This document shows positions 279-63,214 of a stretch of 64,000 bases of DNA, in pieces. This stretch comes from Malacoraja senta (Eukaryota). How positions within the stretch are numbered: the stretch's first letter is position 1; each line of letters starts with the position of its first letter. The stretch covers positions 6,262,001 through 6,326,000 of the forward strand of contig CM075979.1 of NCBI GenBank assembly GCA_038087875.1, given 5' to 3'. The position numbers were made by a program, and so were the translations under genes. The notes below the pieces were generated by a model. The model had not been told where the DNA came from, did not search any database, and was given only the letters and a program-made list of their open reading frames with translations.

Positions 279-400
279 TGTCGGAAGGAACTGCAGATGC
301 TGGTTTCAACCGAGGATAGACACAAAAAGCTGGAGTAACTCAGAGGGACAGGCAGCATCTCTGGAGAGAAGGTATAGGCGATGTTTCGGGTTGAGACCCT
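279..400 (-). mobile_element. Penelope-like terminal repeat fragment
   Basis: Matches reverse complement of the recurrent unit GAAGGGTCTCGACCCGAAAC...AGATGCTGCCTG...GAGTTACTCCAGC...CAGCATCTGCAGTTCCTTC. Confidence 0.75.
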
Positions 401-909
401 GCATTGTGGTATGTTTGTGATTGGTTTTTCTTGCTAGTATTTCTGCGCATCTACTATCCGAATAGCGCACCGCATGCTTTTGAGATTTCGGCATATTTTA
501 CGGGCATTATAGCTGCACAATGCCGTTTCACGGGTTTTATAATGGACATTGTTATTCCTCTATGAAAACAAGATGATTAGTCGGCGGTTCGTTTATCATT
601 GGGTCTTGCAGCTGGTAGTACCTGACTCACCGGAACAGTCCCAACGCGAACATCGGTCCCAATGCGGTTCCCAATGCTGGTTTATTGCGGGTTCTAAAGA
701 AGGGTCTCAACCCGAAACGTCACCCATTCCTTCTCTCCACAGATGCTGCCTGTCCCGCTGAGTTACTCCAGCTTTTTGTGTCTACCTTCGGTTCTAAAGC
801 ACGTTGCCCTGCAAGCATTCGGGGGGTATTCTAAGTCTACCACGTTTCATTAAAGTAAAATACAACACATCGTCCTATTTTGGCTTCTAATGTAATTTAC
901 TTGACTGAG

Positions 910-1090
910 ACTCAGGTTTTCAAGGGAGTGTTAGATTTAGCTCTTGGGGCTAACTGAATCAAGGGATTACGGGGGAAAAGCAGGAACGGGGTTCTGATTT
1001 TGGATGATCAGCCATGATCATATTGAATGGCGGTGCTGGCTCGAAGGGCCGAATGGCCTACTCCTGCACCTATTTTCTATGTTTCTATGA
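910..1090 (+). mobile_element. CR1-type LINE 3' end
   Basis: GATCAGCCATGATCATATTGAATGGCGG...GGGCCGAATGGCCTACTCCTGCACCTATTTTCTATGTTTCTATG tail shared with the coding CR1 copy at 58.3-59.2 kb. Confidence 0.85.
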
Positions 1091-1854
1091 GACTTCGTGA
1101 ATTCCCCTGATCTCCCAGAGTGGAACTGTTCCAGGGTGTGACACATCGGGCCCAGATGCCAAAGGACAAAGTTATCAGCAAAATAATGGCTTGAACCGCA
1201 ACTCTACCCGGTTCCATGTCCGGAGTCGCTGAACTTGTGTTAGGAAATCAATCCGGAGGCATAAGTAGTTTATCTCCAGTAAAGCTGTCATCTTGTTTAA
1301 CCGTCTCTGGAGAAGCCAACCCTTTAGCCACATTTGCAAGGGTTTATCCTCGCACGCGTCACTTCCCATGAAAGCCCACTGACAAAATGCAATCCTAATT
1401 CGTTGCGCCAGCTAGAAACTAGACTCAAATTTGTTTTCTTAAGACCACAAAGCGGTTTAAATTGTTACCGTTCTCTCAACCTTTTGTGCCTTGTGTATCC
1501 CCCGATATCCCATTAAGAGTAATGAACTGCCGCATGGCCTCAACTGGGATTAATTGGAATTAGTAGTTGAATAGGCAGCACCAGAACGTTACACTTATTA
1601 CTAACAGCACAGATTTTTTTATTTTTTATTTAATAACATGGTGATTATCATCGTTTAGAGTACGCAGAAAACAACTCGTGTACTAAGACCATCTTGCAAT
1701 CACCTGTGTCATCTGAGCTTTAATTATCTCAGATGAAAGCAAAGATCTTAAAGGGTTAAGAAGATTTATGGATGTGGAGACCGGCAATAAAAATGGTAAA
1801 CGGAGCGACTGCTTTACCATCTATCTTATTCAAGAGCAAAATAAATAGCGGGAG

Positions 1855-2400
1855 AAAAAGATAGACACAACAATGCTGGAGTGACTCAGCGGACCAGGCA
1901 GCATCTCTGGAGGGAAGGAATGGATGACTCGGGTCGAGTTAGGAAACTTTTGGAAACGTTAGGACAGTTATGACTGAGGCGAAACAAAAAGTCAAAAGAA
2001 CCGCAGAGAACGTTCCCCTGACTCTCAGTCTGAAGTCTGAAGAAGGGTCTCGACCCGAAAAGTCACATATTCCTTCCCTCCAGAGATGCTGTCTGACCCG
2101 CTGAGTTACTCCAGTTTTTATTATTTTTTTGTCTATCTTCGGTTTAAACCAGCATCTGCGGTTCCTTCCTACGCAAAAACAAAGAAGATGCTCCCGTTTG
2201 GAAGTTGTTTGATGTGAAATGCAGTGGGATGTGGACTCTTGCAAAATTAAGGGGGCTCTACTGTTCAAAGTCAATAACGTTCTCTGGAGACTGACACACA
2301 AAAAAAGCTGGAGTAACGCAGCGGGTCAGGCAGCATCCCTGGAGTAAATGTGTGGCTGACGTTTCGGGTCGAGACCTTTCTTCAGACTGAGAGTCAGAGA
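1855..2400. mobile_element. Cluster of three Penelope-like terminal repeats (-,+,-) in fgf3 intron 1
   Basis: Units at ~1855-1940, ~2015-2175 and ~2293-2400; hammerhead-like core CTGAAGAAGGGTCTCGACCCGAAA at ~2037-2060. Confidence 0.75.
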
Positions 2401-2728
2401 AACGTTCTCTGGGGTGGCTTCGACTTTTTGTTTCGCCTTTTAGTCATGACTTTTAAAAAAAAGTTTCCTAACTTTCATAATCATGTGTACACATTGTGTT
2501 TGCCAGCAAAGAATCTCCCTGTGCCTAGTCACATGTGACAATAAAAGTATTCCTATTCCTATTCCTATTCCCACTCCTATTCAGTTCAGTTCATCAGGGT
2601 TTTATATTAGGAATATTTTGGCTGTTAAAATCTTGTTCTGGCGTGTTGTCACAACTCGCGTCTTCCTCTGCTGTTATATCGGGGCATTATTCAAAGCGCG
2701 TATCTTCACCCCCCGTTCCTTCTTTCAG

Positions 2729-2832
2729 GTATCTTGGAAATAACTGCTGTCGATGTAGGAGTGGTGGCGATCAAGGGGTTGTTTTCGGGTAGATATTTGG
2801 CCATGAACAGAAGAGGCCGCGTGTACGCGTCG
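2729..2832 (+). CDS. fgf3: Fibroblast growth factor 3, coding exon 2 (104 bp)
   Basis: Acceptor tctttcAG|GT ATC; translates (S)[34 protein letters not shown]; donor TCG|GTAAG at 2833. The 104-bp phase1/phase0 middle exon is canonical for FGF genes and the peptide matches FGF3. Confidence 0.96.
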
Positions 2833-3969
2833 GTAAGTTGATTATTTCATATTAAATATGTGTTCATATTGCTATGGGGAGGTCATGCCTCGCTAGGTTG
2901 CTATATATATGCAGAGTGCTTGAAGAACTTTTCTTTCCCATCGTCTGTATCAATGAGAAATTCCTTCACTTGTGAATTCGTTCATCCATTCATTCATTAA
3001 ATGGTATTTAATGAAATATCCTAAAATAAAACGAACTCAATATTTTACACGGCTACCTTATGGCAGATGGACAATGCACCTGTTAAAGTTTCTTTATATA
3101 AGGAACTGATGTCTGCTATTAACAATGACACTTAAAAAAAACACACAGCCAAAAAAACTATTGATGAGGGAAAGTGAGGGTATACCAGGTCTGAAGGAGG
3201 GTCTCGACCCGAAACGTCGCCCATTCCTTCTATCCAGAAATGCTGCCTGTCCCGCTGAGTTACTCCTGCATTTTGTGTCTGTCTTCGGTGTAAACCAGCA
3301 TCTGCAGTTCCTTCCTACACATCCCCCATGTCTGTCAACATGTTTTGTCAACTCGCCCCTTCCCACTTCCACTATAATGGGGGGGGGGGGGGGGGGGGTT
3401 CAACGGGGTTGTACAAATATTCATGCTGTTTAGTTTATTTGATGATTCATGAGATCCCGAGAATGCTTTAAAATAATCTGACGAAGAACAGCCCAGCGGA
3501 TGGCAAACCACGAGTTTAAAGTTGATTTCAGAGGGTAGAAGCATTTGAAGTGGTCCGCTGAATACGAAGGAGATGGACAGATCAGTAAAGGGATTCGCCG
3601 GAAGAAAGCTACAAGAAGGAGAGAGAATGGAGATTCTGGTTCTCAAAGTTCCCAACAAACTGTAAATGCTGGAACCTTGTGTAAAACACACAAAGCGGTG
3701 GAACTCATCGGGGCGAGGCAGCATCTCAGCTGGGAAACGGACTGGTGACATTTCGGGTCGGGACACTTCTTCAAACGTTTCCTACATCTTCTGCAACCTC
3801 CTCTCTAGCTCTCACTTGGAAGTACATAAGATGCGACGAAGCAGTGGGCCACGTGTAACTAGAACGCCTTTTTTCGTGAGCAAAACAGAAAGTGGCGGAG
3901 TGACTCGGCGGGTCAGGCAGCATCTGTGGAGGGAAGAATGCACAGGCAACGCTTCTGGTTCGGACCCTT

Positions 3970-4690
3970 CTTTTTTTTTTTAATTGTTATTTTATTGGTA
4001 GCAATTGTACAGAAAAGAATGACTTAAGAGTTCTACAACTCCAGCACAGCTTCAATTTTAACATTTTACAAACAGAATATTAAATTGAAATAAGAAAAAA
4101 AGAGAGAAGAAAGGAAAGAGAAAGATGAAAAGAAGGAGAAAGAAGAGGAGATATGTCCGTCGACCCACCCACGCGCCCCTCACCCAGCCTTACAATCAGT
4201 TTTGAGTTTGTGTTCGACCACTGTATTGTTCAAGAAATTCAATAAAAGGAGACCATATTTTCAAAAATTGATTTGGTTTGTCAGTCAAGACAAACCTATT
4301 TTTTCTAGATGTACATAGATACATAGATACATAGAAAATAGGTGCAGGAGTAGGCCATTCGGCCCTTCGAGCCTGCACCGCCATTCAATATGATCATGGC
4401 TGATCATCCAACTCAGTATCCCATCCCTGCCTTCTCTCCATACCCCCTGATCCCTTTAGCCACAAGGGCCACATCTAACTCCCTCTTAAATATAGCCAAT
4501 GAACTGGCCTCAACTACCCTCTGTGGCAGAGAGTTCCAGAGATTCACCACTCTCTGTGTGAAAACGTTTTTCCTCATCTCGGTCTTAAAGGATTTCCCCC
4601 TTATCCTTAAGCTGTGACCCCTTGTCCTGGACTTCCCCAACATGTAGTGTCTCTGGCGTTTCCGTAATCCACATCTTCACTGAGGGGAGT
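3970..4690 (-). mobile_element. L1-clade LINE 3' end with poly(A), interrupted by a CR1 copy
   Basis: T-run at 3971-3981; minus strand reads LPSVKMWITETPETLH|LEK..RFVLTDKPNQFLKIWSPFIEFL (L1 ORF2 C-terminus style), split at an ATGTA duplication by the CR1 at ~4314-4642. Confidence 0.65.
4314..4642 (-). mobile_element. CR1-type LINE 3' end (young subfamily)
   Basis: MLGKSRTRGHSLRIRGKSFKTEMRKNVFTQRVVNLWNSLPQ..., nearly identical to 58.9-59.2 kb; (TCTATGTA)n tail. Confidence 0.9.
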
Positions 4691-6214
4691 TCGGACCCTT
4701 CTTCACACCCTTAACGCTGCCTGTCCAGTCTCTGAGCAGATGCTGCCTGGCCCGCTATGTTGTTCCAACTCTTTGTGTTTTGGTCAAGTTTCCAGCAACT
4801 GCCGTTCTTGATATCTCCTAGAATGGCTTTCATGGCCGTTTGTGACCGGCGGTAAACGTTTGGCATGAATGTCGCGAATGGAATAGACCGTTTCCCCCTT
4901 TCGCTTCTGAAGTCACCAACACGTTTGCAGCCATTTTCTGACGAGTCGGCGTCTAGTTCAAACCCCTTCCCACGCCACTCCCACCTCTGCAAGAACAAGG
5001 TGGGCGGTGCTCCCACCGTGAGACCCCCCCCCCCCCGGTGGAGAGACGCAAACCAAAGGCCACACAAGTGGCTACACGGCTTGAAGTCTGTGCATAACCA
5101 CTGTGGAAAATCACCCAGCACTTTTGTGCCTATTTCCTTCGCTCCATAGATGCTGCTGCACCCGCTGAGTTTCTCCAGCACTTTTGTCTACCTTCGATTT
5201 TCCAGCATCTGCAGTTCCTTCTTAAACACCACACTTTCAAATCCTGTCTGAAGGAAGGTTCAAGTTTCCCACCCGAAAACGTCACCCATTCCTTCTCTCC
5301 AGAGATGCTGTCTGTCCCGCTGAGTTACTCCAGCACTTTGTGTCTATCTTCGGTGTAAAACAGCATTCTACACACTCTTATTCTGACAAGCAGAAAGACA
5401 CCTTTTGAAGTTGAAGTATATTTCCACCACTCTCTGTGTGAAAACGTTGCCCCTCCGGTTCCTATTAAATCTTCCCCCTTCTCATCTTAACTTCTCACCG
5501 TCGCATCAAACTTTCAAATCAACTATTTCACGGACAAAGGTACACAAAAATGCTGGAGAAACTCAGCGGGTGCAGCAGCATCTATGGAGCGAAGGAAATA
5601 GGTAACGTTTCGGGCCGAAACCCTTCTTCAGATGTTGATTCGCGATTTCCAATTCGCGACCGGGCTAACCGCACTGGAGTCAGACTCAAGCCCGGCTTTG
5701 CTGTATCTTCAAGGCAAATAGTTAGTTGGTTTAAGGCTATGCAGAGTACATGCATAAGTGTGGAAAAGTTAACTGTATGCGTTTACATTCAACATGACAC
5801 TTGAAGTTGGGTCCTGGTCTTTTCACGCCTCCAGTTCTCCTCCCCTACTTTGGTTCTGGATACCCGATCCGAAACATCACCTATCCACCCCCTTTTCTCC
5901 AGCGATGCTGCCTGGCCCCCTGAGTTACTCCAGCAGTTTGTATCTATTTTTGGTATAAACCAGCATCTGCAGTTCCCTTCCTACACAAGCAGCGGTTATG
6001 CATGGACAACACTAACCCACTGACCAAGAGGTCTTTGCTAAAGCCAATGCCTTTCAAACCTGTCCCGCCGAGTTACTCCAGCATTCCTTCCTATCATATC
6101 CGAACTGTTCATTCCCGGTTGCTAGTTTGTACCCTTTTCTCATGTCATTCTGAGATGTGTGCGCCAAGATTTGATCTAAAGAGTGTGGGCACACACGAAA
6201 TTTCCGTTTCAAGT

Positions 6215-6315
6215 CCTCCCTTCCCCCTGCTCCTCCCTCCTTCCCCCTCCCCCTCCTCCCATCCCCTCCACCTCCTCCCATCCCCTCCACCTCCTCCCAT
6301 CCCCTCCACTCCCCC
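6215..6315. repeat. C-rich low-complexity tandem repeat
   Basis: Repeats of CCCCTCCACCTCCTCCCAT; G-rich on the minus strand. Confidence 0.8.
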
Positions 6316-7692
6316 GTACGGTCTTTTCTCTGATATCAGGGGCTTCAAATCTCTTTATCTGTTCAAAGTAGGACTGCACACAGAAACGGTTCACACGCTG
6401 CAACTCTCTTATCTGTGATCAGATTGCTGCAGTCCTAATGGCCGCGTGTTCAATGTGCCCCACTGTTTCAATCAATGCAGTTCTATCCTTGATCGGCTGA
6501 TATCCTCGCAGACACATAAATGAGCAAAAGTGGTGGTTCCCATCAGGGGTTGATAATCTGATGTGTACCATGTACTCTGTTTAGGGGTAAGAAAGCAATT
6601 GGCAATCACCACTTCCGACTATTTTTTTTATTTGATAAGTGCTTTTGAAATTCAATGTGCAATTACTATAACAAAAAAAAGGTCTGTTTTATAAGGTCGA
6701 GGTTGTTAACTTTGAGGGCGGGGGAGTGGGGAGGGGGGGGAGGGGGTGTGAGAGAGAAGCAATATCCTTTACACCTACATAATTAGTACAGCTGTTACAA
6801 AATTGTTGCTAGCCCTGATTGTCATTAATTTACTGGGAAATATTCATGTACTATATTATCTGATTTAATTGGACAGCAAGCAAACAGAAGTTTATTGCCG
6901 TGTTACTTTTTACTGCACATTTGACAATAATAAACCAATCACTGGACTCTGAGTCTGTCAGTGTATATCACTGAAGATAGACATTAAATGCTGGAATAAC
7001 TCAGCTGGTCAGGCAACGTCTCTGGAGAAAAAAAGAGTAGGTGATGTTTCTACAGAAATGCTGCCTGATCCGCTGAGTTACTCCAGCTTTTTGTGTCTAT
7101 CTTCTGTTTAAACCAGGCTGAAGAAGGGTCTTGACCCAAAACGTCACCCATTCCTTCTATGCAGAGATGCTGCCTGTATCGCTGAGTTAGTCCAGCATGT
7201 TGTGTCAATCTGCAGTTCCTTACTACACAGTATATTAGAGGCACCGAACATAGAATATTGAACATAGGACGTAGAACAGTTCAGCACAGGAACAGGCCCT
7301 TCGGCCCACAATGTCCGTGCCGAACATGATGCCGAGTTAAACTGATCGCGTCTGCTTGTACTTGACCCATATCCCTCAATCCCTTGCACTTCCATGTGCC
7401 TATCTCAAAACCTCTTAAATGCCACAGTCATATCTACCTCCATCACCACCGTGGCAATGCTGGTATCGATTTGTATTGCAAAGGAATAAAGGTAACTTTC
7501 GTAACTAAGCTTGAGTTGAATTTGAGAGGGAAATAACCTAAGGAGTCATTATAATCTCAATATGTTATTTCGTTAGCCTTCGTTGAAGTTGGCTAAATTG
7601 GCTTGATATGGGGTCGTCTGGCTGCATATATTTTAATCACCCAATCGGCCGGAGTGCAGTAGGTGACCAAGCGCGGACCATGTTGTTCGCTT

Positions 7693-8478
7693 TGTGTAAG
7701 AAGTGAACTGCAGATGCTGGTTTACACCGAAGATAGACACAAAATTCTGGAGTTACTCAACGGGACAGGCAGCATCCCTGGAGAGAAGAAATGGGTGGCG
7801 TTTCGGGTCGAGGCTCTTCTTCAGACTGAGAGTCAGGGGAGGGGGAGACTTGAGATGCTGGGGTAAGATGTGAAAATGACAGATCAAAGCAGACGAGGGT
7901 TAAGGAAATGTGGTTTGGTCACAAAACGCTGGAGTTACCCAGCGGGTTATTCAGCGTGTCTCGCCGAGCTACTCCAGCATTTTGTGTCTATCTTAAATGA
8001 AACTAGCATCTGCAGTTCCTTCCCACAAAAATGTAGAATGGTTCATTGTTAGCTGAGGGGAAGGTGGCAACGAGGCATACAATCAGTAAAATAGCAGTAA
8101 CATTAATCAGGAGGACAGTGAAACTAGTCTACTATGTTCTGTTGAGCTGAAGCAAAGCAAGAATTTCATTGTCCTATCAGGGACACATGACAATAAACTC
8201 TCTTGAATCTTGAAACTAGTCGGCAAACTAGTGTGGGGGAGGTTCGGAGAGAGAGGGAAAGCAAGGGTTCCTTGAAGTTAGAGAAATCAATAGTCGTACT
8301 GAAGGAAGAAGGGTCTGAAGAAGGGTCTCGACCCGAAACATCACCCATTCCTTCTCTCCAGAGATGCTGCCTGACCCGCTGAGTAACTCCAGCATTCTGT
8401 GTCATACCGCTGGGTTGTAAGCCGCCCAAGCGAAATCTAAGGTGCTGTTCCTCCAATTTGCGTCGGGCCTCACTCTGA
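7693..8478 (-). mobile_element. Penelope-like element 3' portion: GIY-YIG endonuclease C-terminus, 3'UTR and hammerhead-bearing terminal repeat, with nested insertions
   Basis: After removing the nested insert at ~8293-8402, the minus strand reads QSEARRKLEEQHLRFRLGGLQPSGM.IDFSNFK, a typical PLE GIY-YIG C-terminal motif. It runs through a ~430 bp UTR into CTGACTCTCAGTCTGAAGAAGAGCCTCGACCCGAAAC and the abundant short repeat. Confidence 0.8.
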
Positions 8479-8594
8479 TTCGCTTTGTTCCATTCAGGTA
8501 CGAAGTTGTTTTCACTCCTTCCAATGGGGAACTATGAGGTGTAGGCATCCCTGCTATTTAGATATGTGTTTTCCAAATACGTCAAATTGAAAAG

Positions 8595-10000
8595 TTTTTT
8601 TTCCAAAATTAAACTTTATTTGGAATTAAAACATGCAGACAAAATCAAAAACTGTTCAAAAACACATTCTCAATGTCCATACATTCAATAGTGTCATACT
8701 CAGTTTGCATCTATCTTTACACAAAACATCTTTGCCACGCATATGGCCCTTGGGGTGATATGTCTTTCCTTCTTTGAGGGGTGTCTCCACCACACCCTGC
8801 CCCCCCCCACCCCTCCCCCAATGTGCAGCAGCTGAAGGACCCTAGACTGTGGTCCTCCCCCACAGAGCCTTGAAGAGATTAAAACACCAGAAGACAGCTT
8901 GTCCTTACTGAAGGATTTGGATGCTCTCTGTGAGTGGGGGAAAAACCTGGCGGATGTCATTCAATAAAACCGAATGTCATACCATGCATGTCTCACACAA
9001 GACCAAACAACTTTTATCAGAATACAACATGGGTAGCCATACATTGCTTGCTGTCGACCATCATCCATACCTAGGAGTCGAATTAAGTAAAGATTTAAGT
9101 TGGGCGACGCATATTAGTCAAGTGTCCAACAAAGTAATTAGAACTCTCGGCCTACTCAAAAGAAATTTTCACGCATGTAGTACATCCATCAAAGAGAATG
9201 CCTACAGGTCCTTGGTCCAAATTGGAGTATTGTGGAGCCGTATGGGATCCTTTCAACAACAACAACAAGAAGATTACCCTGGAGAAAGTACAACGCCGAG
9301 CAGCCCGCTTTGTGTTTAATGACTACAAGCGCAAATCAAGCGTGAATAATATGCTGACTTCTCTCGGATGGGATACCCTAGAGCTCCGCAGAATCAGGCT
9401 AAGACATATTGCAATTTACAAGGAGATTCACAAAATCACGCCATCAAATCTCCCGTCATCCCAGAGCACCGACTGCCATGAAAAAGGAAAAATAACGGTC
9501 CCTACATCATCAACTAGCTAAATTTCATAAACTTTGCTACCAATATTCCCTTTACCCTAGGACGATAAGGGAATGGAATATGTTACCACCTAACACACAT
9601 GCTGCTCCCGATGTTAAGTAATTTACAAAGGAGATTGAGCAGCTAGATCTCCTCAACTTGGTCAAAAAGGCCCACTTCAAAATGTAATCGCTACTCTACT
9701 CACTTCGACCTGTGCGAGATAACCACTGATGAGATGTTTGCGCAGTAATCAACCAGAACCAGAACCAGACATTGGCTGCACCGAGCTTCAGTTCATCCCT
9801 CAGCATGTACTTCCGTAGCCTGGAGCTGGCCAGTCGGCAACATTCCCTGATGGTCATCTCGTTCTGCTGGGCGATCAACAAGTTTCGGACAGAGCAGAGA
9901 GAGTTGATGACCATCCAGCACCTCTCAGAATGTGCTCCTGGGAACAGACCTGGGAAAAACAGAGAGTCCTCTTCACGGAGCTGTTTGGGATGAATGGTCA
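8595..10000 (-). mobile_element. Tx1/L1-clade LINE 3' end split by a CR1-clade insertion
   Basis: Minus-strand peptide ...ECCRLASSRLRKYMLRDELKLGAAN (ending at ~9770) continues as KALWGRTTV-stop (8871-8842), followed by a UTR with AATAAA. Confidence 0.7.
8873..9769 (+). mobile_element. Divergent CR1-clade LINE 3' fragment (RT C-terminus, frameshifted)
   Basis: WRMSFN..C..M, HPYLGVELSKDLSW..HI, LEYCGAVWDP, LEKVQRRAARFV, LGWDTLELRR motifs; (ACCAGA)n tail at 9752-9769. Confidence 0.85.
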
Positions 10001-54222: not shown

Positions 54223-56179
54223 AATAAGATGCAACAAATTCAGGCCCTGGGCTTTATTGTGTATTTACAGTCACAAGATAGACAGAGGAATTTGTCTTGG
54301 CGATCTGCATGCAAAACCGTTGTAAACACTTGAGTTAAAAGTAGTAACACATCATTGCTGGTCAAACTCATACAGCACATTGCAACATAATTGAAATATC
54401 ACAATCTTTATAAGTTGATACCTCCTATTCCAAAATAGTATTATTTAATGCAATGGACGTTATTAAGAAAATGATCCTTTTTTTGGTGATATTATGTAAA
54501 GGACATACTTGGAAAATACTAAATCGGGTCTAAAGAAGGGTCTCCACCCGAAACGTCACCTATTCCTTTACTCCATAGATGCTGCCTCACCCGCAGAGTT
54601 TCTCCAGCATTTTTGTCTACTTTGGAAAATACTGGTACTATCCATCCATTCTGTCCTAGGCTTATATTTATAGCCACATATGTAATACCATCATCACCTT
54701 GGATCCCATCCCAAACTCTATCCCAGTCTCCATTGCTTTATTCTGCAGCAACTAAACAAAGGTAATGGACAAACGGGTGGAGGAAATCTTCAAGAATGAT
54801 ATTCTTTGAGTCATTGCCATTCATAGAAAGAATATTAATATGCATGATATTTCAATAACGTTGAACAGTTGCTCAGGGAAAAAAGATCTCTTCTATACTT
54901 TAGATAGACAAAGAATGCTGGAGTAACTCACCGGGTCAGTCGGCATCTCTGGGGAAAAATAATGGGTAACGTTTCGGGTCGAGGTCACAAAGTCAGGTCT
55001 TCAGGTCTGAAGAAGGGTCTTGACCTGAAACGTCATCTATTCCTTTTCTCCAGAGAAGCTGTCTGACCGGCTGAATCACTCCAGCTTTTTGTGTCTATCT
55101 TTGGTTTAAACCAGCATCTGCAGTTCCTTCCTGCACATTTCATTTTCTATACTATGCATATTTTAGTTGGCTTTGATATCAGTCTTCTTTTCTAACCCAT
55201 TCCACAGTAAACAAACTTCTTGATTCAAATTCTGATAAGACACAAAGGAGCAAAGAAGAAACAGACATTTAGTTTGATCTAATGAAAAGGAATTACAGAT
55301 GTTGGTTTATACCAAAGATAGACACAAAATGTAGGAGTAACTCAACAGGTCAGGTGGCATCTCTGGAGAAAATGGACAGGTGACGTTTCGGGATGGGACC
55401 CTTCTTCAGACTGAGAGTCAGGGAAAGTTCAGTTCAGTTTATTGTCTTGCGTACCTTCTGAAAAAGAGACCCAATCCGAAATGTCACGTGTCCATTTTCT
55501 CCAGAGATGCCACCTGACCTGCTGAATTACTCCAGTATTCTGTGTCTTTCTTTGAATTGATCTTTAGTAAAACAGTTCACGAGAATCACTGACATATGTA
55601 GTATTTCAGCTGTTCAACCACTTTTCTTCATTTAACTAATTTCAAGTCTTACGACATGGCTGAACTGATTAAATCTGATGGAAATTAATTTGTCTTCTTA
55701 TCCAGTATAATCTTTACCATTTATGAAAGTGTGAATTATAGTTTGTATATTCGCTTGTATGAGTACTTTTGTTATCCCAGTGATAATAGAATTGCTTATA
55801 TTTCAAATTTGCACAATTTCAATAGTTTCAATAGTATTACAATTGTTTACTAGAGTTTCTTATTTATAAATGACATTCTGACAAAATAAACAAATTAAAT
55901 AAGTTATATATAATGTAACGGAAGTAAGTGGACTGAACAAAAGAAAACGATTCTCGACACAAAATGCTGGAGTAACTCAGCGGGTCAGGCAGCATTTCTG
56001 AAGAGATGCTGCCAGTCACGCTAAGTTACTCCAGCATGTTGTGTCTTTCTTAGGTGTAAACCAGCTTCTGCAGTTCCTTCCTACAAATAAATGATTCCAT
56101 ACATAAAATTAACCCAGACTATTTTAATAAGATCAAACTGTTTGAATCAATATGATCTCTTGAATTCCTGGTAGATTCC

Positions 56180-56488
56180 AAGCAGTGGTGCAGTGGTAGT
56201 GTTGCTGCCTTACAGCGCCAGAAGCCTGGGTTTGATCCTGACCACGGGTGCTGTCCGTATGGAGTTTGTAGGTTCTACCCGCGATCGCGTGGGTTTTCGC
56301 CAGGTGCTCCGGTTTCCTCCTACACCCCAAAGACTTAGAGGTTTGCTAGTTAATTTGCTCTGGTAAAATTGTAAATTATTCCTAGCATGTAGGATAGGGC
56401 GAGTGTATAGGGATCGCTGGTCGGCGCGATCTCAGTGGGCCGAAGGGCCTGTTTCCACCCTGTATCTCTAAACTAAACTACACTAAAA
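56180..56488 (+). mobile_element. V-SINE (HE1-like), full length
   Basis: GTGGTGCAGTGG head, GGTTTGATCC, central domain, GGGCCGAAGGGCCTGTTTCC...(TAAAC)n. Confidence 0.8.
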
Positions 56489-56494
56489 TAAATT

Positions 56495-57382
56495 TGAACA
56501 GGTGCATGATTCCTTCAAGGTCGAGTCGCAGGTAGGTAAGGTGGTCAAAAAGGCCTTTGGCATTCATCAGTCAGAGTATTGAGTATAGAAGTTGGGAGGT
56601 CATGTTGCAGTTGTATAAGACATTGGTGAGATCACATTTATAATATTGTGTTCAGTTCTGGGCACCATGTTATAGTAAAGATATTGTCAAGCTGGAAAGG
56701 GTTCAGAGAAGATTTACGAGTTTGTTGCCAGGACTAGAGGGCGTGAGCTATAGGGAGAGGTTGAGTAGACTGGGTCCCTATTCCTGGGAGTGCAGGAGGA
56801 TGAGGGGTGATCTTATAGATGTGTATAAAATCATGAGAGGAATAGATCGGGTAGATGCACAGAGCCTCTTGCCCAGAGTCGGGAATCTTGGACTAGAGGA
56901 CATAGGTTCTAGGAGAACGGCAAGAGATTTAAAAGGTAGACAAAAATGCTGGAGAAACTCAGCGGGTGAGGCAGCATCTATGGAGCGAAGGAAATAGGCA
57001 ACGTTTTGGCCCGAAACTTTGCCTATTTCCTTCCCTCCATAGATGCTGCCTCACCCGCTGAGTTTCTCCAGCATTTTTGTCTACCCTCGATTTTCCAGCA
57101 TCTGCAGTTCCTTCTTGAAAGACTTAAAAGGAATCTGAGGGGTTACTTTTTCCACACAAAGGGTGGTGGGTGTATGGAACAAGCTGCCAGATGAGGTAGT
57201 TGAGGCTGGGACTATCCCAAGGTTTAAGAAACAGTTAGACAAGTACATGGATAGGACAGGTTTGGAAGGATATGGACCAAGCGCAGGCAGGTGGGACTAG
57301 TGTAGCTGGGACATGTTGGTCAGTGTGGGCAAGTTGGGCCAAAGGGCCTGTTTCCCGGTTGTAACACTCTATGACTCTATGA
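56495..57382 (+). mobile_element. CR1 3' fragment with nested palindromic Penelope-like insert (~56935-57118)
   Basis: LPGLEGVSYRERLSRLG..RRMRGDLIDVYKIMRGIDRVD; insert flanked by AGA(T/C)TTAAAAGG. Confidence 0.85.
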
Positions 57383-58259
57383 GAAGTTAGATTAAGAGGG
57401 ATCTCTTAGGTAATATTATAGTCCAATCTGTATTCACACCTTCAGTTTTTACTTTTCAACTTCCGTCATGGACCTCTAAGGAAACTACCTGCGTCAGCTT
57501 GTCATGGTGTAACTGTGTATATTTCTGCGAACGATGGTGTGGTAGTGTCTATGACAGGTATGGGGCAATGGAGGAGCCACTTACAACATGATCTGTTTGC
57601 ATAGACAAATGTTTCCGAGACAACATTGTTCATAGACAACACTGTTTCTATTACAAATGTTCACAAGGAAATGTATGATGCAAAGGAGGAAGTTGCAATA
57701 AACTGGCACCTTTCATGAACAAGAATCCCCAAAGGGCATTATAATTAATTAAGTACTTATGAAGTCTAGTCAATGTTGTCATCTAGGACAGGGCAACTAA
57801 TTTGCGCAATGGGGAAGAGTTGGCAGAAAGGACGTGTGATAGTAAATATTAACAGACTATAAATGAAGCACAAAATTCATGGAGAGGGAGCGGCCAAGTT
57901 GTAAAAAGGTACTAAAAATCAGGGGTCATATTGATTGTGAAAGATTGAACAGCTGATGACCATTAGAGGAGTTTATAAAACATTAGTTTAGTTTATTGTC
58001 ATGTGTATCGAGGTACAGTGAAAATTCTTTATGTTGTGTACTATCCCATCAGCGGAAAGACCATGCTATACCATAGGGAAAGACCAAGATTAAAATCAAG
58101 CCGTCGACAGTGTACAGATACAGGATAGAGGGACTAATTTTTATGACAAGATAACGCTTACGTCTGAAGAAGGGTCTTGACGCGAAACGTCACCTATTCC
58201 TTCGCTCCATGGATGCTGCCTCACCCGCTGAGTTTCTCCAGCATTTTTGTCTACCTAAC

Positions 58260-59183
58260 GATGACACTAAGCTGGGGGGGCAGTGTTAGCTGTGAGGAGG
58301 ATGCTAGGAGACTGCAAGGTGACTTGGATAGGCTGGGTGAGTGGGCAAATGTTTGGCAGATGCATTATAATGTGGATAAATGTGAGGTTATCCACTTTGG
58401 TGGCAAAAACGGGAAGGCAGACTATTATCTAAATGGTGGCCGATTAGGAAATGGGGAGATGCAGCGAGACCTGGGTGTCATGGTACACCAGTCATTGAAA
58501 GTAGGCATGCAGGTGCAGCAGGCAGTGAAGAAAGCGAATGGTATGTTGGCCTTCAGAGCAAGAGGATTTGAGTATAGGAGCAGGGAGGTTCTACTGCAGT
58601 TGTACAGGGTCTTGGTGAGACCACACCTGGAGTATTGCGTACAGTTTTGGTCTCCAAATCTGAGGAAGGACATTATAGCCATAGAGGGAGTGCAGAGAAG
58701 GTTCACCAGACTGATTCCTGGGATGTCAGGACTTTCATATGAAGAAAGACTGGATAAACTTGGCTTATACTCGCTAGAATTTAGGAGATTGAGAGGGGAT
58801 CTTATAGAAACGTACAAAATTCTTATGGGGTTGGACAGGCTAGATGCAGGAAGATTGTTCCCGATGTTGGGGAAGTCCAGGACAAGGGGTCACAGCTTAA
58901 GGATAAGGGGGAAATCCTTTAAGACCGAGATGAGGAAAAACTTTTTCACACAGAGAGTGGTGAATCTCTGGAACTCTCTGCCACAGAGGGTAGTTGAGGC
59001 CAGTTCATTGGCTATATTTAAGAGGGAGTTAGATGTGGCCCTTGTGGCTAGAGGGATCAGGGGGTATGGAGAGAAGGCAGGTACGGGATACTGAGTTGGA
59101 TGATCAGCCATGATCATATTGAATGGCGGTGCAGGCTCGAAGGGCCGAATGGCCTACTCCTGCACCTATTTTCTATGTATCTA
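58260..59183 (+). mobile_element. Young 5'-truncated CR1 LINE, uninterrupted ORF2 C-terminal ~270 codons
   Basis: LQGDLDRLGEWANVWQMHYNVDKCEVIHFG...RPHLEYCVQFWSP...QRVVNLWNSLPQ without stops; inserted within a Rex1-like element (57985-58154 and 59185-59500). Confidence 0.95.
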
Positions 59184-59184
59184 T

Positions 59185-59500
59185 GGCAAGATAAAGTCCA
59201 GTAAAGTCCGAGGGTCACCAATGAGGTAGATAGTAGTTCAGGACTGCTCTCTGGTTGTGGTAGGATGGTTCATATGCCTAATAACAGCTGGGAAGAAACT
59301 GTCCCTGAATCTGGAGGTGTGTGTATTCACACTTCTGTACCTCTTGCCTGATGGGAGAGGGGAGAAGAGGGAGTGACCGGGATGAGACTCATCCTTGATT
59401 ATGCTGCTGGCCTTGCCGAGGCAGCGTGAAGATGGAGTCAATGGAAGGGAGGTTGGTTTGTGTGATGGTCTGGGCTGCGTCCATAATTCTCTGCAATTTG
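59185..59500 (-). mobile_element. Rex1/Babar-like LINE 3' region (continues at ~57985-58154)
   Basis: RCLGKASSIIKDESHPGHSLFSPLPSGKRYRSVNTHTSRFRDSFFPAVIR. Confidence 0.8.
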
Positions 59501-60065
59501 CTGTTATGTGTTTGTTTATATTTTTGATGGGTTCACCACTAGAATACAAGAGTCAAGATCCAAGTCAAGGGTGTTTATTTGTCATATGTACCGAAATGAA
59601 ACCATGAAATACTTACTTGCAGCAGCACAACGGGTTTGTGAACACAGTTCTCATAGGTAACAAAAGAAACTTAATATTAAGGCAAAACAAAAACCTTACA
59701 AGTTTGGATACACTTCAACCTTTTGGGAGAAACCAATGTTAAAAAGCATTAATACCACAGAGTCAACAATATACCCAATGTGGAAACTAAAAACTGTAGA
59801 TGCTGGTTTATACAAAGATAGACACAAAGTGCTGGAGTAACTCAGCGGGTCAGGCAGCATCTCTGGAGAAAAGAAATGGGTGACGTCTTCAAACTGAAGA
59901 AGGATCCCGACCGGAAACATCACCCATCCTTTTCTCCGGAGATGCTGCTTGTGCCACTTTGTGTCACTTTTGTCACTTTGTGTCTATCTTTGGTATACCC
60001 AATGCAACCTGTGGCAGAGACTGTGTAGGGAAGAATGGCAGATGCTGGTTTAAACTGAAGACAGA

Positions 60066-60360
60066 CGCAGCGATTGAGTTACTGCCTTACAGCGCCTGAG
60101 ACCCCGGGTTCGATCTTGACTACGGGTGCTGTATGTACGGAGTTTGTACAATTCCCCCCGTGACCTCGTGGGTTTTCTCTGAGATCTTTGGTTTCCTCCC
60201 TCGTTCCAAAGACCTACAGGTTTGTAGGTTAATTGGCTTGGTGTATGTGTAAATTGTCCCTAGTAGTGTTTATGTGCGGGGATCGCTGGTTGGCACGGAC
60301 TCGGTGGGCTGAAGGACCTGTTTCTGCACTGCATCTCTAAACTAAACTAAACTAAACTAA
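60066..60360 (+). mobile_element. V-SINE inserted in a Penelope-like repeat
   Basis: GGTTCGATC B box, central domain, (TAAAC)n tail; host repeat resumes at AGACACAAAACGCTGGAG. Confidence 0.78.
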
Positions 60361-61657
60361 GCAGACACAAAACGCTGGAGCAAAAACCTGGACCCGCTGA
60401 GTTACCTCTAGCTTTTTGTGTCTGTCTGTGGCACAGACATCTTTTCATAAAGATATCTGGGTTGAAACCTCAGTGGAACATCTGCACTCTGTCTGATCCA
60501 AAACATCACCTATTCCTTTTCTCCAGAGATTCTGCCTCACCTGCCCAGCTACGCCAACATTTGTGTCTATCTTCGGTGTAAAGCAGCATCTGCAGATCCT
60601 TCCTACACATGTATGCAAACCAATTGGGATACTTCGATGCTGCCATTTCCACATGATATAGGTTGTGAAGCATTTGTCTAGCATCTGCGCTTTGTTTAAT
60701 TTAGTTTAATTTTAGAAATACAGCACGGAAACAAGCCCTTAGGCCCACCAAGGCTACACTGACCAGCGATCCCCGCACATTAACACTATCCTACACACAC
60801 TAGGGACAATTTACACTTATCCCAAATCAATTAACCTACAAATTTGTACGTCTTTGGCGCGTGGGAAAAAAATCAAAGATCATAAGATCACGTGATAGGA
60901 GCAGAATGAGGCCATTCAGCCCATCAAATCTATTCTGCCATTCATTCATGGCTGATCTATCTTTTCCTCTCAACCCAACCTCCTGACTTCTGCCATAATC
61001 TCTGACGCCTGTACTAATCAAGAAAATCTGGGAGAAAACCCACGCGGCATTTGAAATTGTCCGTCACGCCCCTTCTTCTTTTGTAAAGCAATGCTATTTT
61101 GTCTGCACGTCTCTCAACATAACTTCAGGTCACAAGGAATACCGCAGGCAATTACGACAGTAATTGTAACCCAGTTTGTGCAATGAACAGACAAATTGGA
61201 ATTACCACGTTAACTCATATGGTCCCACCCTATCAGAGAATTCCCTTTGTAGTATCCATGTTCCCCCCACCTTCACTGCTACTGAAAATTAACTCGCTTT
61301 TCCTCTTTACCAAGTCCGGCGAAGGCATTGGGACCTAAAATTTTAATTATCCTTCTTTGTCCATCGATGCCGCCTGACCTGCCAATTGTTTCCAGAATAG
61401 CTTTTGTTTTTATTTAACGCAATAAAATTTTTTCGATTATAGATTATGTTATATGTGACAGAAGCGAGAGCAGTGGGAGAGTCTAGGACCAGAGGGCACA
61501 GCCTCAGAATAAAAGGACGTACATTTAGAATGGAGAAGCGGAGGAATGCCTTTAGTCAGAGGGTGGTGAATCTGTGGAACTCATTGCCACAGACGGCAGT
61601 AGAGGTCAAGTTATTGGGTATTTTTATAGTAAAGATCAATAGTTTATTGACTAATAA

Positions 61658-61969
61658 TGGGCCTGTCCCACTTACGCGACCTTTACAGGGGACTGCCGCG
61701 ACCCGTGAAAGGTCACCAGAATTTTCAACATGTTGAAAATTCAGCGGCGACCAGAAAGACGCTACGACTCTTTGAAGACCATAGGAGACCTCTCACGACC
61801 ATACAGGCGAGCCCTGGCGACATGTCGCGGGTGACCTCTCACGACCATAGGAGACCTCTCACGACCTCTTACGACCATAGGCGACCTCTCACGACCACTC
61901 ACGACCTCTCACGACCTGTCACGGGTCACGACACACGCCTGTAAAGGTCGCGTAAGTCGGACAGGCCCT
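61658..61969. mobile_element. PIF/Harbinger-like MITE nested in a CR1 3' end (~61470-62100)
   Basis: TIR GGGCCTGTCCCACTTACGCGACCTTTACAGG / CCTGTAAAGGTCGCGTAAGTCGGACAGGCCC; TAA TSD (61655-61657, 61970-61972); internal GACCTCTCACGACCATAG repeats. Confidence 0.88.
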
Positions 61970-63214
61970 TAAGGGTGTCAATTATTATGGGAGAAGGCAA
62001 GAGAATGGGGTTGAGAAAGGAAAATAGATCAGCCATGATCGAATGGAGACTTGATGAGCCGAAGAGCCTAATCATGATCCTATTGTGAACAATGATCCTA
62101 TTATATAAAAAACATCATTTATTAGAAATTAATTCCTGGTTAATTGATGACACTATACTGTACATTGCCTCTGAAATGCAGTTCCATTTACATCACAGAA
62201 TACAAGTGACAAAGTGTAATATACGAAACACTGCTGTAAAGCACAATTCAATGATTCAATGATACTTTATTGTCATTTAGTTTAGATTCATTTTCGTTTT
62301 TATTAATCACATCGACAATGAGTTTATAAACCAGGATGGCCTCATAACCAATGGTAAAATAATTCACCAGTCAGATAATCCATGTGTAATGTGGGATCTG
62401 CAATTGAATGTACACTGTTCTTAATGTTTAATGCAAAATAAATATATATTTTACTCAGATTTTACAGTAAATTATTGCAAAATATGCATTCAGAATTTAG
62501 CAATAACAGCAATGAAATTTCAGAAGATTGAAGCTACAGGAGAAGGATGTATGTTTGGGCAAGAACGGATTTGCAGAGTCTATCTCAGTCGCAAATTCCG
62601 TTCAAACAGCAAAGATTCTGAAAAGCAAAAAATAAGCTGATGCTGGAATTTGAAACCACAACAGATGGTTATCATAAGGATCATAAGACATAGGAGCAGA
62701 ATTCATCCATTTGGCCCATCGAGTCTGCTCTGCCATTCGATCATGGCTGATCTATTTTTCGCCTCTCAACGCCATTCTCCTGCCTTCTCCTCTTATAAGC
62801 TCTCGACACCCTTACTAATCAAGACCAATCTCTGAATCTCTATCTGACGAAGAGTCTCGGCCCGAAACATCACCCATTCCTTGCTCCAGAGATGCTGCCT
62901 GACTCGCTGAGTTACTCCAGTATTGTGTGGCTATCTCCGAATCTTTGAGATACCCAGCGGGTCAGGCAACGTGCGAGGATGAATTAACATTTCAAGACAA
63001 TGGCCTCTCATCAGAACGGGTCCAATAAGAGATCATTTGACCAGAAAATGTAAATATCTTTCTCCCCTTCACACATGCCAACAGAGACACTGAGTATTTC
63101 CTGTGCTTTGTGTTTTTACACCAATATATATTCCTCTATTTTTCGTGCACTGGGTGTGGACAATGTGATAACAAAGGCTCTGCACGAGCAAGTAAACATA
63201 TTTTGAATAAATTA

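What the first reader, a model, noticed from the sequence alone, without database searches (positions are those of the whole stretch)
279..62970. The dominant repeat of the window carries a minimal hammerhead-ribozyme core and derives from a Penelope-like retroelement
Seen: more than 40 copies (by eye) of a ~130-200 bp unit whose least-decayed members read CTGAAGA-A-GGGT-CTCG-ACCC-GAAA-CG-TC-ACC (e.g. near-intact + copies at 8315, 47623; - strand at ~47198-47232, with further near-intact copies at ~17657-17700). A second subfamily reads CTGAAGA-A-GGGT-TTCG-GCCC-GAAA-CG-TT-GCC (15027, 43112, 5605-5632 minus). Between subfamilies helix II keeps pairing (U-A to U-G, CUCG to UUCG tetraloop) and the base after the cleavage triplet still pairs with the U before CUGA (A to G). 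At 7693-8478, 21715-22078 and 39220-40250 the unit is contiguous with a GIY-YIG endonuclease C-terminus. Established: the hammerhead core is CUGANGA...GAAA...NUH, and Penelope-like elements carry minimal type I hammerheads in their pseudo-LTRs, where a short palindrome (here ACGU) replaces helix III so that cleavage needs a dimer. Inference: this genome is seeded with such motifs at roughly one per 1-2 kb, as a non-autonomous retrozyme-like family that may be unannotated as ribozyme-bearing in chondrichthyans.
Basis: partly seen in the sequence, partly recalled or inferred. Interest (0 to 1): 0.85.

Follow-up and report, generated by a model that had tools for sequence, protein, structure and literature searches.

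The report
Penelope retroelement tails carrying hammerhead motifs
The commonest repeat in this window is the roughly 95-134 bp 3' end of a Penelope-like retrotransposon that carries a minimal hammerhead-ribozyme motif; this kind of element has been known in vertebrates since 2014, nearly all copies here are decayed, and no cleavage was detected.

Summary
102 arms of one unit cover 15% of the read bases; 33 match the hammerhead string within 3 mismatches (0 expected). The consensus meets the published sequence criteria for Penelope (PLE) minimal hammerheads: CUGAAGA, one extra A, G10.1-C11.1, GAAA, palindromic ACGU and GUC.

The PLE origin rests on insertion footprints: heavy 5' truncation, an optional ~38 bp tail, TSDs, and 23 head-to-head pairs, of which 20 of 21 classifiable ones join a long-tailed arm to a short-tailed arm (p=1e-5). 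Four copies are collinear with an ORF end plus 3'UTR.

Caveats:
- Pfam, HMMER and BLASTP could not confirm that ORF end as GIY-YIG.
- Rfam hammerhead models do not score the motif.
- Only 5 motifs are fully intact, as neutral decay predicts.
- Poly(A) RNA reads from a related species show both-strand, chimeric transcription and no ends at the cut site.
- There are no tandem arrays, so "retrozyme-like" is not supported.

First readers noted this family in at least 7 other windows of this genome. Verdict: a new member of a known kind; modest interest.

The parts
277..62939 (.). Span of the repeat family: 102 arms (9,523 bp). 53 arms include the hammerhead part. 23 head-to-head pairs, 6 tail-to-tail, 6 tandem adjacencies.
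   Evidence: blastn with the computed consensus; pair classification
43110..43236 (+). Best single example: subfamily-B long-form unit with a fully intact min-HHR (43112-43139), flanked by the 12-bp TSD AACAAAGAAAGT (43100-43111 and 43239-43250).
15027..15054 (+). Intact subfamily-B min-HHR inside the head-to-head pair 14914-15116.
5604..5631 (-). Intact subfamily-B min-HHR in a solo short-form arm (5542-5632).
30852..30879 (+). Intact subfamily-A min-HHR; helix II has one G.U pair.
55007..55034 (+). Intact subfamily-A min-HHR inside the pair 54902-55137, which has the 9-bp TSD TTCTATACT.
7693..8301 (-). Parent-element 3' end: ORF end (..IDFSNFK, stop near 8270), then 3'UTR, then a long-form unit (7847-7693). 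A nested inverted pair sits at 7923-8027.
8403..8528 (-). 42-codon remnant of the parent ORF (…RRKLEEQHLRFRLGGLQPSGM). It is separated from its last 8 codons by a nested unit at 8312-8403(+).
   Evidence: No Pfam, HMMER or BLASTP confirmation.
21714..22061 (-). Second collinear copy: ORF end, ~230 bp UTR, unit.
25582..25921 (-). It is 5'-truncated at the ORF end and inserted into a CR1-type LINE.
39245..40250 (+). Fourth collinear copy. The ORF end is at 39245-39334, an unrelated CR1 fragment is nested at about 39463-40100, and the unit is at 40136-40250.
28531..28693 (.). Head-to-head pair, both arms truncated at position 35. One arm is long-tailed and the other short-tailed. 13-bp TSD TCCAACATGGTGT.
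29547..29759 (.). Head-to-head pair of near full-length arms (5' ends at positions 3 and 1). One short and one long tail. 13-bp TSD CTTTGAGTTACTC.
11640..11839 (.). Head-to-head pair, long plus short tail, 12-bp TSD AGATAAGTGGTT.
23913..24140 (.). Young head-to-head pair (96-97% identical to the consensus), short plus long tail, 10-bp TSD.
17588..17748 (-). Short-form unit with 60 nt of parent UTR, used as the reference for RNA reads. The predicted cut lies between 17659 and 17658. This copy has GAAU in place of GAAA.

Best explanation
The repeat is the 3'-terminal module of a Penelope-like retroelement (PLE) family.

Anatomy of the 134-nt consensus:
- Positions 1-2 are GU.
- Positions 3-30 are a minimal type-I hammerhead motif: C3UGAAGA9, an extra A, helix II GGGU/ACCC capped by CUCG, G12AAA, C15.2-G16.2, and U16.1-C17. 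There is no closed helix III, so the ACGU palindrome can form helix III only between two copies.
- Positions 31-100 are a conserved region that ends at a first 3' terminus.
- Positions 100-134 are an optional 'tail' that ends at a second terminus.

Inferred mechanism, following published PLE biochemistry: the PLE RT-endonuclease starts cDNA synthesis internally at either of two sites about 38 nt apart and copies towards the 5' end. It usually stops early or ends exactly at G1. It can prime on both nicked DNA strands, which yields TSD-flanked head-to-head pairs with one long and one short tail.

Shown here: the family anatomy, the two 3' end classes, the sharp 5' end, the TSDs, the pair asymmetry, collinearity with a longer element, and the motif's fit to the min-HHR definition.

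Inferred, not shown: that the parent ORF is RT plus GIY-YIG, and that the hammerhead cleaves. If it does cleave, it would do so only in multimeric PLE transcripts as a dimer, possibly assisted by protein. The copies in this window are dead insertions that decay neutrally and are transcribed passively.
For: Motif:
- 33 matches against 0 expected.
- A strict descriptor finds 5 intact copies against 0 in 200 simulations.
- The consensus meets the sequence criteria listed in PMC4209133: a nucleotide between A9 and G10.1 (A in 55 of 55 copies), G10.1-C11.1, and palindromic 15.2-16.2.
- Architecture and the GAAACGUC string are the same as in the Anolis Poseidon PAc junction read from its GenBank file.

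PLE footprints:
- The 3' ends are bimodal, at about 86-100 and 122-134, and the extra 38 nt are a fixed sequence.
- There are 23 head-to-head pairs against 6 tail-to-tail and 6 tandem. 20 of 21 classifiable pairs are long plus short (binomial p=1e-5).
- TSDs of 9 bp or more occur in 26% of pairs and 11% of solo arms, against 0.5-0.8% in mismatched-flank controls.
- These are the features described for PLEs in PMC8557442 and explained by internal, two-site, both-strand priming in PMC11167929.

Parent element: four loci are collinear over ORF end, UTR and unit.

Independent raw reads from a related species reproduce the 5' boundary (1,165 loose ends at 17688), the tail sequence continuing from the short-form end, and the inverted joints.
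Against: - No tool recognised the ORF remnant as GIY-YIG or PLE: Pfam found nothing at E up to 10, phmmer found nothing against 1.84 billion proteins, the ESM Atlas gave no usable hit, and BLASTP against the PAc EN C-terminus gave no alignment.
- No PLE RT or EN domain is present in the window.
- Rfam hammerhead models do not hit, even on 161-nt stretches holding an intact copy.
- There is no covariation with changes on both sides.
- Intact motifs number 5 against 4.9 expected from neutral decay.
- Only 2 of 102 arms start at the predicted post-cleavage position 31.
- RNA reads show continuous depth and no excess of ends at the cut site.
- The minimum-free-energy fold of the consensus monomer pairs GAAGAAGGG with CCCAUUCCUUC, which sequesters the CUGA box.
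Confidence: 0.78

Rival explanations
1. The family is PLE-derived and the hammerhead-like sequence is real, but it is not a working ribozyme in this lineage. It would be kept or carried along for another reason, such as forming part of the RNA 5' end or promoter, being an RT/EN recognition element, or being a mere passenger.
For: - No read ends at the cut site in poly(A) RNA.
- No excess of genomic 5' ends at position 31.
- The dominant 5' end lies at G1, upstream of the motif, so most templates were uncleaved.
- An alternative fold sequesters the core.
- Blocks outside the core are equally conserved.
- Published PAc work found that HHR mutants do not affect insertion and found no RNA-seq ends at the site.
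- Craig 2021 suggests hammerheads may simply parasitise PLEs.
Against: - All 13 core positions plus the accessory PLE-specific features are present in the consensus of both subfamilies.
- No subfamily-diagnostic substitution falls in the catalytic boxes.
- Related PLE motifs do cleave weakly as dimers or with protein.
- Poly(A) RNA-seq of passively transcribed monomers is a weak assay for dimer-dependent cleavage.
Confidence: 0.35
2. The unit is the 3' tail of the CR1-type LINEs that are abundant in the window, or of a SINE that borrows their tail. The hammerhead-like string would then be a coincidence.
For: - CR1-type ORF2 C-termini lie near units at several places.
- One CR1 fragment sits directly upstream of the unit at 40136.
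- The only RT domain in the window is LINE-type.
Against: - Complete CR1 3' ends at about 20500-20700(-) and 59100-59250(+) lack the unit.
- Where CR1 and unit touch, the CR1 ORF is cut off in mid-sequence (15932-15991, 56940-57114), which indicates nested insertion.
- The unit is collinear with a different ORF end in four places.
- The tail and the long/short inverted pairs are not LINE features.
Confidence: 0.03
3. The head-to-head pairs are fold-back or MITE-type DNA transposons whose terminal inverted repeats happen to contain the motif, and the solo arms are their broken halves.
For: - 23 palindromic pairs flanked by TSDs.
- They score as hairpins against miRNA models in Rfam, below threshold.
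Against: - The inner junctions fall at many different positions (5' ends from -11 to 63).
- The outer ends are asymmetric, long on one side and short on the other, in 20 of 21 pairs. TIR elements have symmetric ends.
- TSD length varies from 7 to 13 bp.
- Solo arms have their own TSDs.
- 16 arms continue upstream into a longer element with an ORF end.
Confidence: 0.03

Closest known systems
Minimal hammerheads (min-HHR) of metazoan Penelope-like elements (Cervera & de la Pena 2014, PMC4209133), including fish Xena/Poseidon/Neptune, coelacanth and Xenopus families
   Same: Both have the CUGANGA...GAAA...UH core, one unpaired nucleotide between A9 and G10.1, the G10.1-C11.1 pair, no closed helix III but palindromic 15.2-16.2, and a short helix I. 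Both are massively and widely dispersed as single motifs from truncated PLEs, with pairs on opposite strands noted.
   Different: Helix II here is only 4 bp with a tetraloop; 6-8 bp was reported for Schistosoma and Drosophila. Only two close subfamilies are visible, so the 'families full of compensatory changes' criterion could not be met. Chondrichthyans were not among the taxa named in that paper.
Poseidon_Ac (PAc) of Anolis carolinensis (Frangieh et al. 2024, PMC11167929)
   Same: The hammerhead at the pLTR/ORF junction has the same layout and the identical GAAACGUC string. RT starts internally at two sites 30-40 nt apart about 60-105 nt downstream of the cut site, which gives the optional tail. 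Both DNA strands are nicked and extended. No RNA-seq ends were seen at the cut site.
   Different: No detectable similarity exists between the ORF remnant here and the PAc EN C-terminus. The PAc ORF starts inside the hammerhead, whereas no ORF start can be placed here. PAc is young (99.9% identical copies), whereas these copies are 75-97% identical to the consensus.
Metazoan non-LTR retrozymes (tandem HHR-bearing repeats giving circRNAs; Li, Clavereau & Pollet 2026 preprint, 10.64898/2026.07.22.740005)
   Same: Both are short non-coding sequences with type-I hammerheads, derived from PLE pLTRs and present in non-avian, non-mammalian vertebrates including one chondrichthyan. Dispersed 'monomer' derivatives are reported.
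   Different: Retrozymes are defined by head-to-tail tandem arrays. Here there are none, only 6 chance-like tandem adjacencies, and the typical compound form is head-to-head. The unit, at 95-134 nt, is far shorter than the 363-bp average reported for Chondrichthyes.
L1 twin priming (5' inversions of LINE-1 insertions)
   Same: In both, a single TSD-flanked insertion holds two copies of the 3' part of the element in opposite orientation, produced by priming on both target strands.
   Different: Here both arms start at defined internal RT start sites rather than at a poly(A) tail. The two arms use different start sites (long against short), and the arrangement accounts for 45% of all arms.

Membership tests
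PLE minimal type-I hammerhead (Cervera & de la Pena 2014) | Catalytic boxes C3U4G5A6N7G8A9, G12A13A14, A15.1-U16.1 and H17 in type-I order | tested here: met
   The consensus has CUGAAGA...GAAA-CG-UC (subfamily A) or UU (subfamily B). The strict descriptor finds 5 copies against 0 in simulations.
PLE minimal type-I hammerhead (Cervera & de la Pena 2014) | One unpaired nucleotide between A9 and G10.1 | tested here: met
   Position 10 is A in 55 of 55 aligned copies.
PLE minimal type-I hammerhead (Cervera & de la Pena 2014) | G10.1-C11.1 base pair closing helix II | tested here: met
   Position 11 is G (89%) and position 22 is C (80%; it is a CpG site).
PLE minimal type-I hammerhead (Cervera & de la Pena 2014) | No closed helix III, with positions 15.2-16.2 palindromic so that two copies can form helix III | tested here: met
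   A15.1-C-G-U16.1 reads ACGU in both subfamilies.
PLE minimal type-I hammerhead (Cervera & de la Pena 2014) | Consensus families related by covariation or compensatory changes in the helices | tested here: inconclusive
   Only two close subfamilies are present. The changes are one-sided (U-A to U.G in helix II, A1.1-U2.1 to G.U); there are no double changes.
PLE minimal type-I hammerhead (Cervera & de la Pena 2014) | Self-cleavage after H17 | tested here: inconclusive
   No excess of read ends and continuous depth at 17659/17658 in poly(A) RNA raw reads of a related species. 2 of 102 genomic arms start at position 31. These are weak assays for a dimer-dependent ribozyme, and a bench test is needed.
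Rfam hammerhead clan CL00010 (Hammerhead_1 and others) | Covariance-model score at or above the gathering threshold | tested here: not met
   No hammerhead hit on any unit at gathering threshold or at E up to 10, including 161-nt stretches around a near-intact and an intact copy. This is expected, because the models include a closed helix III.
Penelope-like element (EN+) | [quoted passage not shown] | tested here: inconclusive
   Only remnants of 42 aa or less of the ORF end survive. Pfam, phmmer against 1.84 billion proteins, the ESM Atlas and BLASTP against the PAc EN all gave nothing. There is no PLE RT in the window. The resemblance of ...EEQHLxFRLGxLxPxGxN... to the last GIY-YIG motif is from my memory only.
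Penelope-like element (EN+) | Optional 30-40 bp 'tail' extension at the 3' end, described as unique to PLEs (PMC11167929) | tested here: met
   There are two 3' end classes, at about 86-100 (53 arms) and about 122-134 (42 arms). The extra ~38 nt are a fixed sequence. Reads from a related species continue from the short end into the tail sequence.
Penelope-like element (EN+) | Heavy 5' truncation, with an inverted 5'-truncated copy adjacent and the tail at one end only (PMC8557442) | tested here: met
   There are 23 head-to-head pairs, 20 of 21 classifiable ones being long plus short (p=1e-5). TSDs are enriched against controls.
Penelope-like element (EN+) | Partial tandem arrangement forming pseudo-LTRs around an ORF | tested here: inconclusive
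   No full-length or ORF-flanking tandem copy lies in this window; only 3' fragments are present.
Non-LTR retrozyme | Head-to-tail tandem arrays of the hammerhead-bearing unit | tested here: not met
   Tandem Repeats Finder finds no array containing the unit. Same-strand spacings are irregular, from 154 to 9759 bp.
CR1-type LINE tail or a SINE sharing it | The unit forms the 3' end of the CR1 element | tested here: not met
   Intact CR1 3' ends lack the unit, and contacts between the two are truncating nested insertions.

The most novel reading that the evidence does not exclude
The 95-134 nt unit may be more than debris of truncated PLEs. It could be a self-contained, SINE-like 'mini-PLE' RNA that starts exactly at G1, two nucleotides before the CUGA box. 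38 of 102 arms start there, some with extra 5' G residues as expected from a capped end, and 1,165 heterogeneous loose ends fall there in another species. Such an RNA would be mobilised because the PLE RT initiates internally on its recognition module. On this reading, the near-obligate pairing of one long-tailed and one short-tailed arm is an in vivo footprint showing that the two RT start sites are used on opposite target strands in one integration event. That rule has not been stated in the in vitro work.
Probability: 0.3. Interest if true: 0.5.

Novelty: new member of a known kind. Interest (0 to 1): 0.3.

Why it matters
The finding documents that one PLE terminal module with a hammerhead motif makes up about 15% of a 64-kb stretch of this genome. 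Read data suggest the family also occurs in several related species. In the held literature this vertebrate lineage appears only as one species in a 2026 preprint on tandem retrozymes.

Practical consequences:
- The inverted pairs form long hairpins that score against miRNA models, so they are a likely source of false miRNA or hairpin annotations and of assembly trouble.
- The sharply regular long/short pair architecture gives a large natural data set for testing the two-site, two-strand priming model of PLE integration, which so far rests on one in vitro system.

The finding does not change what is known about hammerhead ribozymes themselves.

Tried and rejected
- Rfam at gathering threshold on the whole window found nothing. 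In E-value mode it gave only sub-threshold miRNA-type hairpin matches on inverted pairs and one unrelated 19-bit HH9 match at 11303-11370. Two 161-nt stretches gave no hammerhead hit.
- Pfam found nothing on ORF pieces next to units or on the 42-aa and 32-aa ORF-end remnants at E up to 10.
- Pfam on ten long ORFs found only a CR1-type RVT_1 at 34637-35353(-).
- phmmer of the 42-aa remnant against 1.84 billion representatives gave 0 hits at E up to 0.001.
- The ESM Atlas gave no usable hit.
- BLASTP against the PAc EN C-terminus gave no alignment.
- I considered a CR1 origin because CR1 C-termini lie beside several units, and rejected it after reading the junctions.
- I considered a MITE or fold-back origin and rejected it on asymmetric ends and variable inner junctions.
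- I looked for a peak of genomic 5' ends at the cleavage site and found none.
- I looked for excess conservation of the catalytic boxes. Non-CpG core positions are 0.94 identical to the consensus against 0.88 elsewhere. The difference comes from subfamily-diagnostic sites outside the core, and other blocks (52-57, 63-72, 104-127) are equally conserved.
- The count of intact motifs equals the neutral expectation.
- The first request for sequencing runs failed because the machine was busy; I repeated it successfully.
- All runs of the likely source organism are served as contigs only, so RNA ends could be examined only in a related species.
- The other notes of this scan are unchecked first-reader notes and were not used as evidence.

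Full report
**Observation.** CTGAAGANGGGTNTCGNCCCGAAACG has 33 matches at up to 3 mismatches on both strands, against none in 100 shuffles. Printing the flanks showed that the motif lies at the 5' end of a longer conserved unit, and that many copies are head-to-head palindromes. A consensus computed from the best copies is 134 nt long. blastn with it finds 102 arms covering 9,523 bp, or 15% of the read bases. 53 arms include the hammerhead part, about one per 1.2 kb. No arm lies within 300 bp of any of the four assembly gaps, so continuity across the gaps does not matter here.

**Anatomy of the unit.**
- Positions 1-2 are GT.
- Positions 3-9 are CTGAAGA, followed by an A at position 10.
- Positions 11-14 are GGGT, 15-18 are CTCG, and 19-22 are ACCC.
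- Positions 23-26 are GAAA, 27-28 are CG, and 29-30 are TC. The predicted cut follows position 30.

The 3' ends fall into two classes. About 53 arms end near positions 86-100 (...CCAGCATTTTGTGTCTATC). About 42 arms end near 122-134 and carry a fixed extra sequence of about 38 nt.

The 5' ends are sharply peaked. 38 arms start at -3 to +6, usually as GTCTGAAG and sometimes with one or two extra G residues. 16 arms continue upstream. 48 arms are truncated at scattered positions.

**What the unit belongs to.** Two retroelement signatures lie near the units.

The first is a CR1-type LINE ORF2 C-terminus (LEYC..VQRRFTR..RGDLIETY), whose only Pfam hit in the window is RVT_1 at 34637-35353(-). Reading the junctions shows that complete CR1 3' ends lack the unit. 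Where the two touch, the CR1 frame is cut in mid-sequence, which indicates nested insertions.

The second is an ORF end ...RRKLEEQHLRFRLGGLQPSGM/NIDFSNFK. It is followed on the same strand by about 230-470 bp of shared 3'UTR and then the unit. This order is collinear at four loci: 8301 to 7693(-), 22061 to 21714(-), 25921 to 25582(-) and 39245 to 40250(+). The last carries a nested CR1 piece.

I could not confirm by any tool that this ORF end is a GIY-YIG endonuclease:
- Pfam found nothing at E up to 10.
- phmmer against 1.84 billion proteins found nothing.
- The ESM Atlas gave no usable hit.
- BLASTP against the C-terminal EN region of the published Poseidon_Ac protein gave no alignment.

Its likeness to the last GIY-YIG motif is from my memory only.

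**PLE insertion footprints.** The literature gives structural hallmarks that can be tested without the protein. Craig et al. 2021 (PMC8557442) describe PLE insertions as highly 5'-truncated. [quoted passage not shown] Frangieh et al. 2024 (PMC11167929) show for Anolis PAc that RT initiates internally at two sites 30-40 nt apart, which is the origin of the tail and is called unique to PLEs. They also show that the enzyme nicks and extends both DNA strands.

All of this is seen here:
- The two 3' end classes lie about 38 nt apart.
- There are 23 head-to-head pairs, against 6 tail-to-tail and 6 tandem adjacencies.
- In 20 of 21 classifiable pairs, one arm is long-tailed and the other short-tailed (binomial p=1e-5 against 0.5 expected).
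- The pairs are single insertion events. TSDs of 9 bp or more flank 26% of them against 0.8% of mismatched-flank controls, and 11% against 0.5% for solo arms. Clear cases of 10-13 bp occur at 11640-11839, 23913-24140, 28531-28693, 29547-29759 and 43110-43236.

I take these footprints as the main evidence that the family is PLE-derived.

**The hammerhead motif.** Cervera and de la Pena 2014 (PMC4209133) defined the PLE min-HHR. It has the catalytic boxes, no closed helix III, and four emergent features: an extra nucleotide between A9 and G10.1, a conserved G10.1-C11.1 pair, palindromic 15.2-16.2, and families with covariation.

The consensus here has every core nucleotide. It also has the extra A (55 of 55 copies), G10.1-C11.1, and ACGU.

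The PAc junction, read from its GenBank file, has the same layout and the same GAAACGUC string.

A strict descriptor finds five fully intact motifs: three identical subfamily-B copies at 5604-, 15027+ and 43112+, and two subfamily-A copies at 30852+ and 55007+. It finds none in 200 second-order Markov simulations.

Rfam's hammerhead models do not score the motif at any threshold I could apply. That is expected for a motif lacking helix III, but it means the motif is not a member of those Rfam families as modelled.

**Is the ribozyme active or selected?** The evidence here is neutral to negative.
- The number of intact motifs (5 of 43 arms covering positions 3-30) equals the 4.9 expected from independent neutral decay.
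- Core positions are somewhat better conserved than average (0.94 against 0.88 for non-CpG sites), and no subfamily-diagnostic substitution falls in the boxes. However, several non-core blocks and the tail are just as conserved.
- Only 2 arms begin at position 31, so cleaved RNA was not a preferred template.
- The minimum-free-energy fold of the consensus monomer pairs GAAGAAGGG with CCCAUUCCUUC instead of forming the ribozyme.

**Transcript evidence.** Runs of the likely source organism are served only as contigs. A 2026 poly(A) RNA-seq run of a related species (coded organism B) is available as raw reads. I laid it on 17540-17830 at 88% likeness, and 6,173 reads matched.
- The reads lie equally on both strands, and 98% run on into unrelated sequence. 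The family is therefore transcribed passively inside other transcripts.
- Depth is continuous across 17659/17658, and the tool lists no place where molecules begin or end in excess.
- The run independently reproduces three features: the 5' boundary (1,165 heterogeneous loose ends at 17688), the tail sequence continuing from the short-form end (525 loose ends at 17588/17589 reading the tail), and opposite-strand joints.
- It also shows the GAAA box intact in 94% of reads where the reference copy is mutated.

Frangieh et al. likewise saw no RNA-seq ends at the PAc site.

**Retrozyme claim.** Retrozymes are head-to-tail arrays. Tandem Repeats Finder finds none containing the unit, and same-strand spacings are irregular. 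The family here is dispersed, as solo arms and head-to-head pairs.

**Novelty.** PLE min-HHRs and their massive dispersal in fishes, coelacanth, Xenopus and reptiles were published in 2014. The tail, the inverted copies and two-site priming were published in 2021 and 2024. A 2026 preprint reports tandem retrozymes in one chondrichthyan. I found no held paper describing this dispersed family in chondrichthyans. The organism of the window is not disclosed to me.

First readers of this scan noted the same family in at least seven other windows of this genome. Those notes are unchecked, and I did not use them as evidence.

The finding is a new member of a known kind. The parts that go slightly beyond the literature are the near-obligate long/short pairing of arms and the sharp 5' end at G1, which could indicate a discrete short template RNA.

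Noticed in passing
window 35720-35824, 14985-15084, 28577-28689, 56957-57063: The head-to-head pairs form long near-perfect hairpins that score 38-49 bits against plant and animal miRNA precursor models in Rfam. All scores are below gathering thresholds. They are a likely source of false miRNA or hairpin annotation in this genome.
   Followed up: partly
window 34637-35353(-), 20639-21256(-), 58177-59094(+), 39620-39871(+), 15740-16372(-), 56650-56950(+): There are several CR1-type LINE ORF2 fragments (RVT_1 hit, then LEYC..VQRRFTR..RGDLIETY..NLWNSLP). At least three are interrupted by insertions of the PLE unit, so the PLE family was active after these CR1 copies were inserted.
   Followed up: partly
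window 42120-42392 and 42402-42606: A (TA)140 microsatellite ends 10 bp before a head-to-head pair. PLE insertion bias towards (TA)n and AT-rich sites is reported in the literature. The clear TSDs elsewhere in the window are not notably AT-rich.
   Followed up: no
window 8305-8365 and 2014-2062: Two copies carry a short duplication of the first 7-12 nt (GAAGAAGGGT-CTGAAGAAGGGT and TCTGAAG-TCTGAAG). In the first copy the duplicate supplies a helix I strand, and the minimum-free-energy fold becomes the textbook hammerhead secondary structure.
   Followed up: partly
window 17616-17666 (reads of run X40): 57 RNA reads from the related species join position 17666 back to 17616 ('goes back 51'). This suggests a variant of the unit with an internal duplication of roughly consensus positions 23-71 in that species.
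   Followed up: no
window 2014-2175(+) and 2296-2397(-): Two units in tail-to-tail orientation share at least 60 nt of a different upstream sequence (...GGCGAAACAAAAAGTCGAAG..CAGAGAACGTT..CTGACTCTCAGT). This could be a second parent subfamily, a composite element, or a local inverted duplication.
   Followed up: no
window 8921-9521(+): Another LINE-type ORF2 C-terminal fragment (..LEKVQRRAARFV..LGWDTLELRR..) differs from the CR1 family above. It lies just upstream of the PLE remnant.
   Followed up: no
window 13594-14206, 48831-49488: Long 'ORFs' listed here run through runs of N (assembly gaps) and are artefacts.
   Followed up: yes
runs X3-X17: DNA contig sets of at least seven other coded organisms hold 21-26% of the sampled 31-mers of a 4.9-kb stretch and about 50% of a 340-bp PLE 3' fragment. 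This suggests that near-identical copies of the repeat families are shared across several related species.
   Followed up: no
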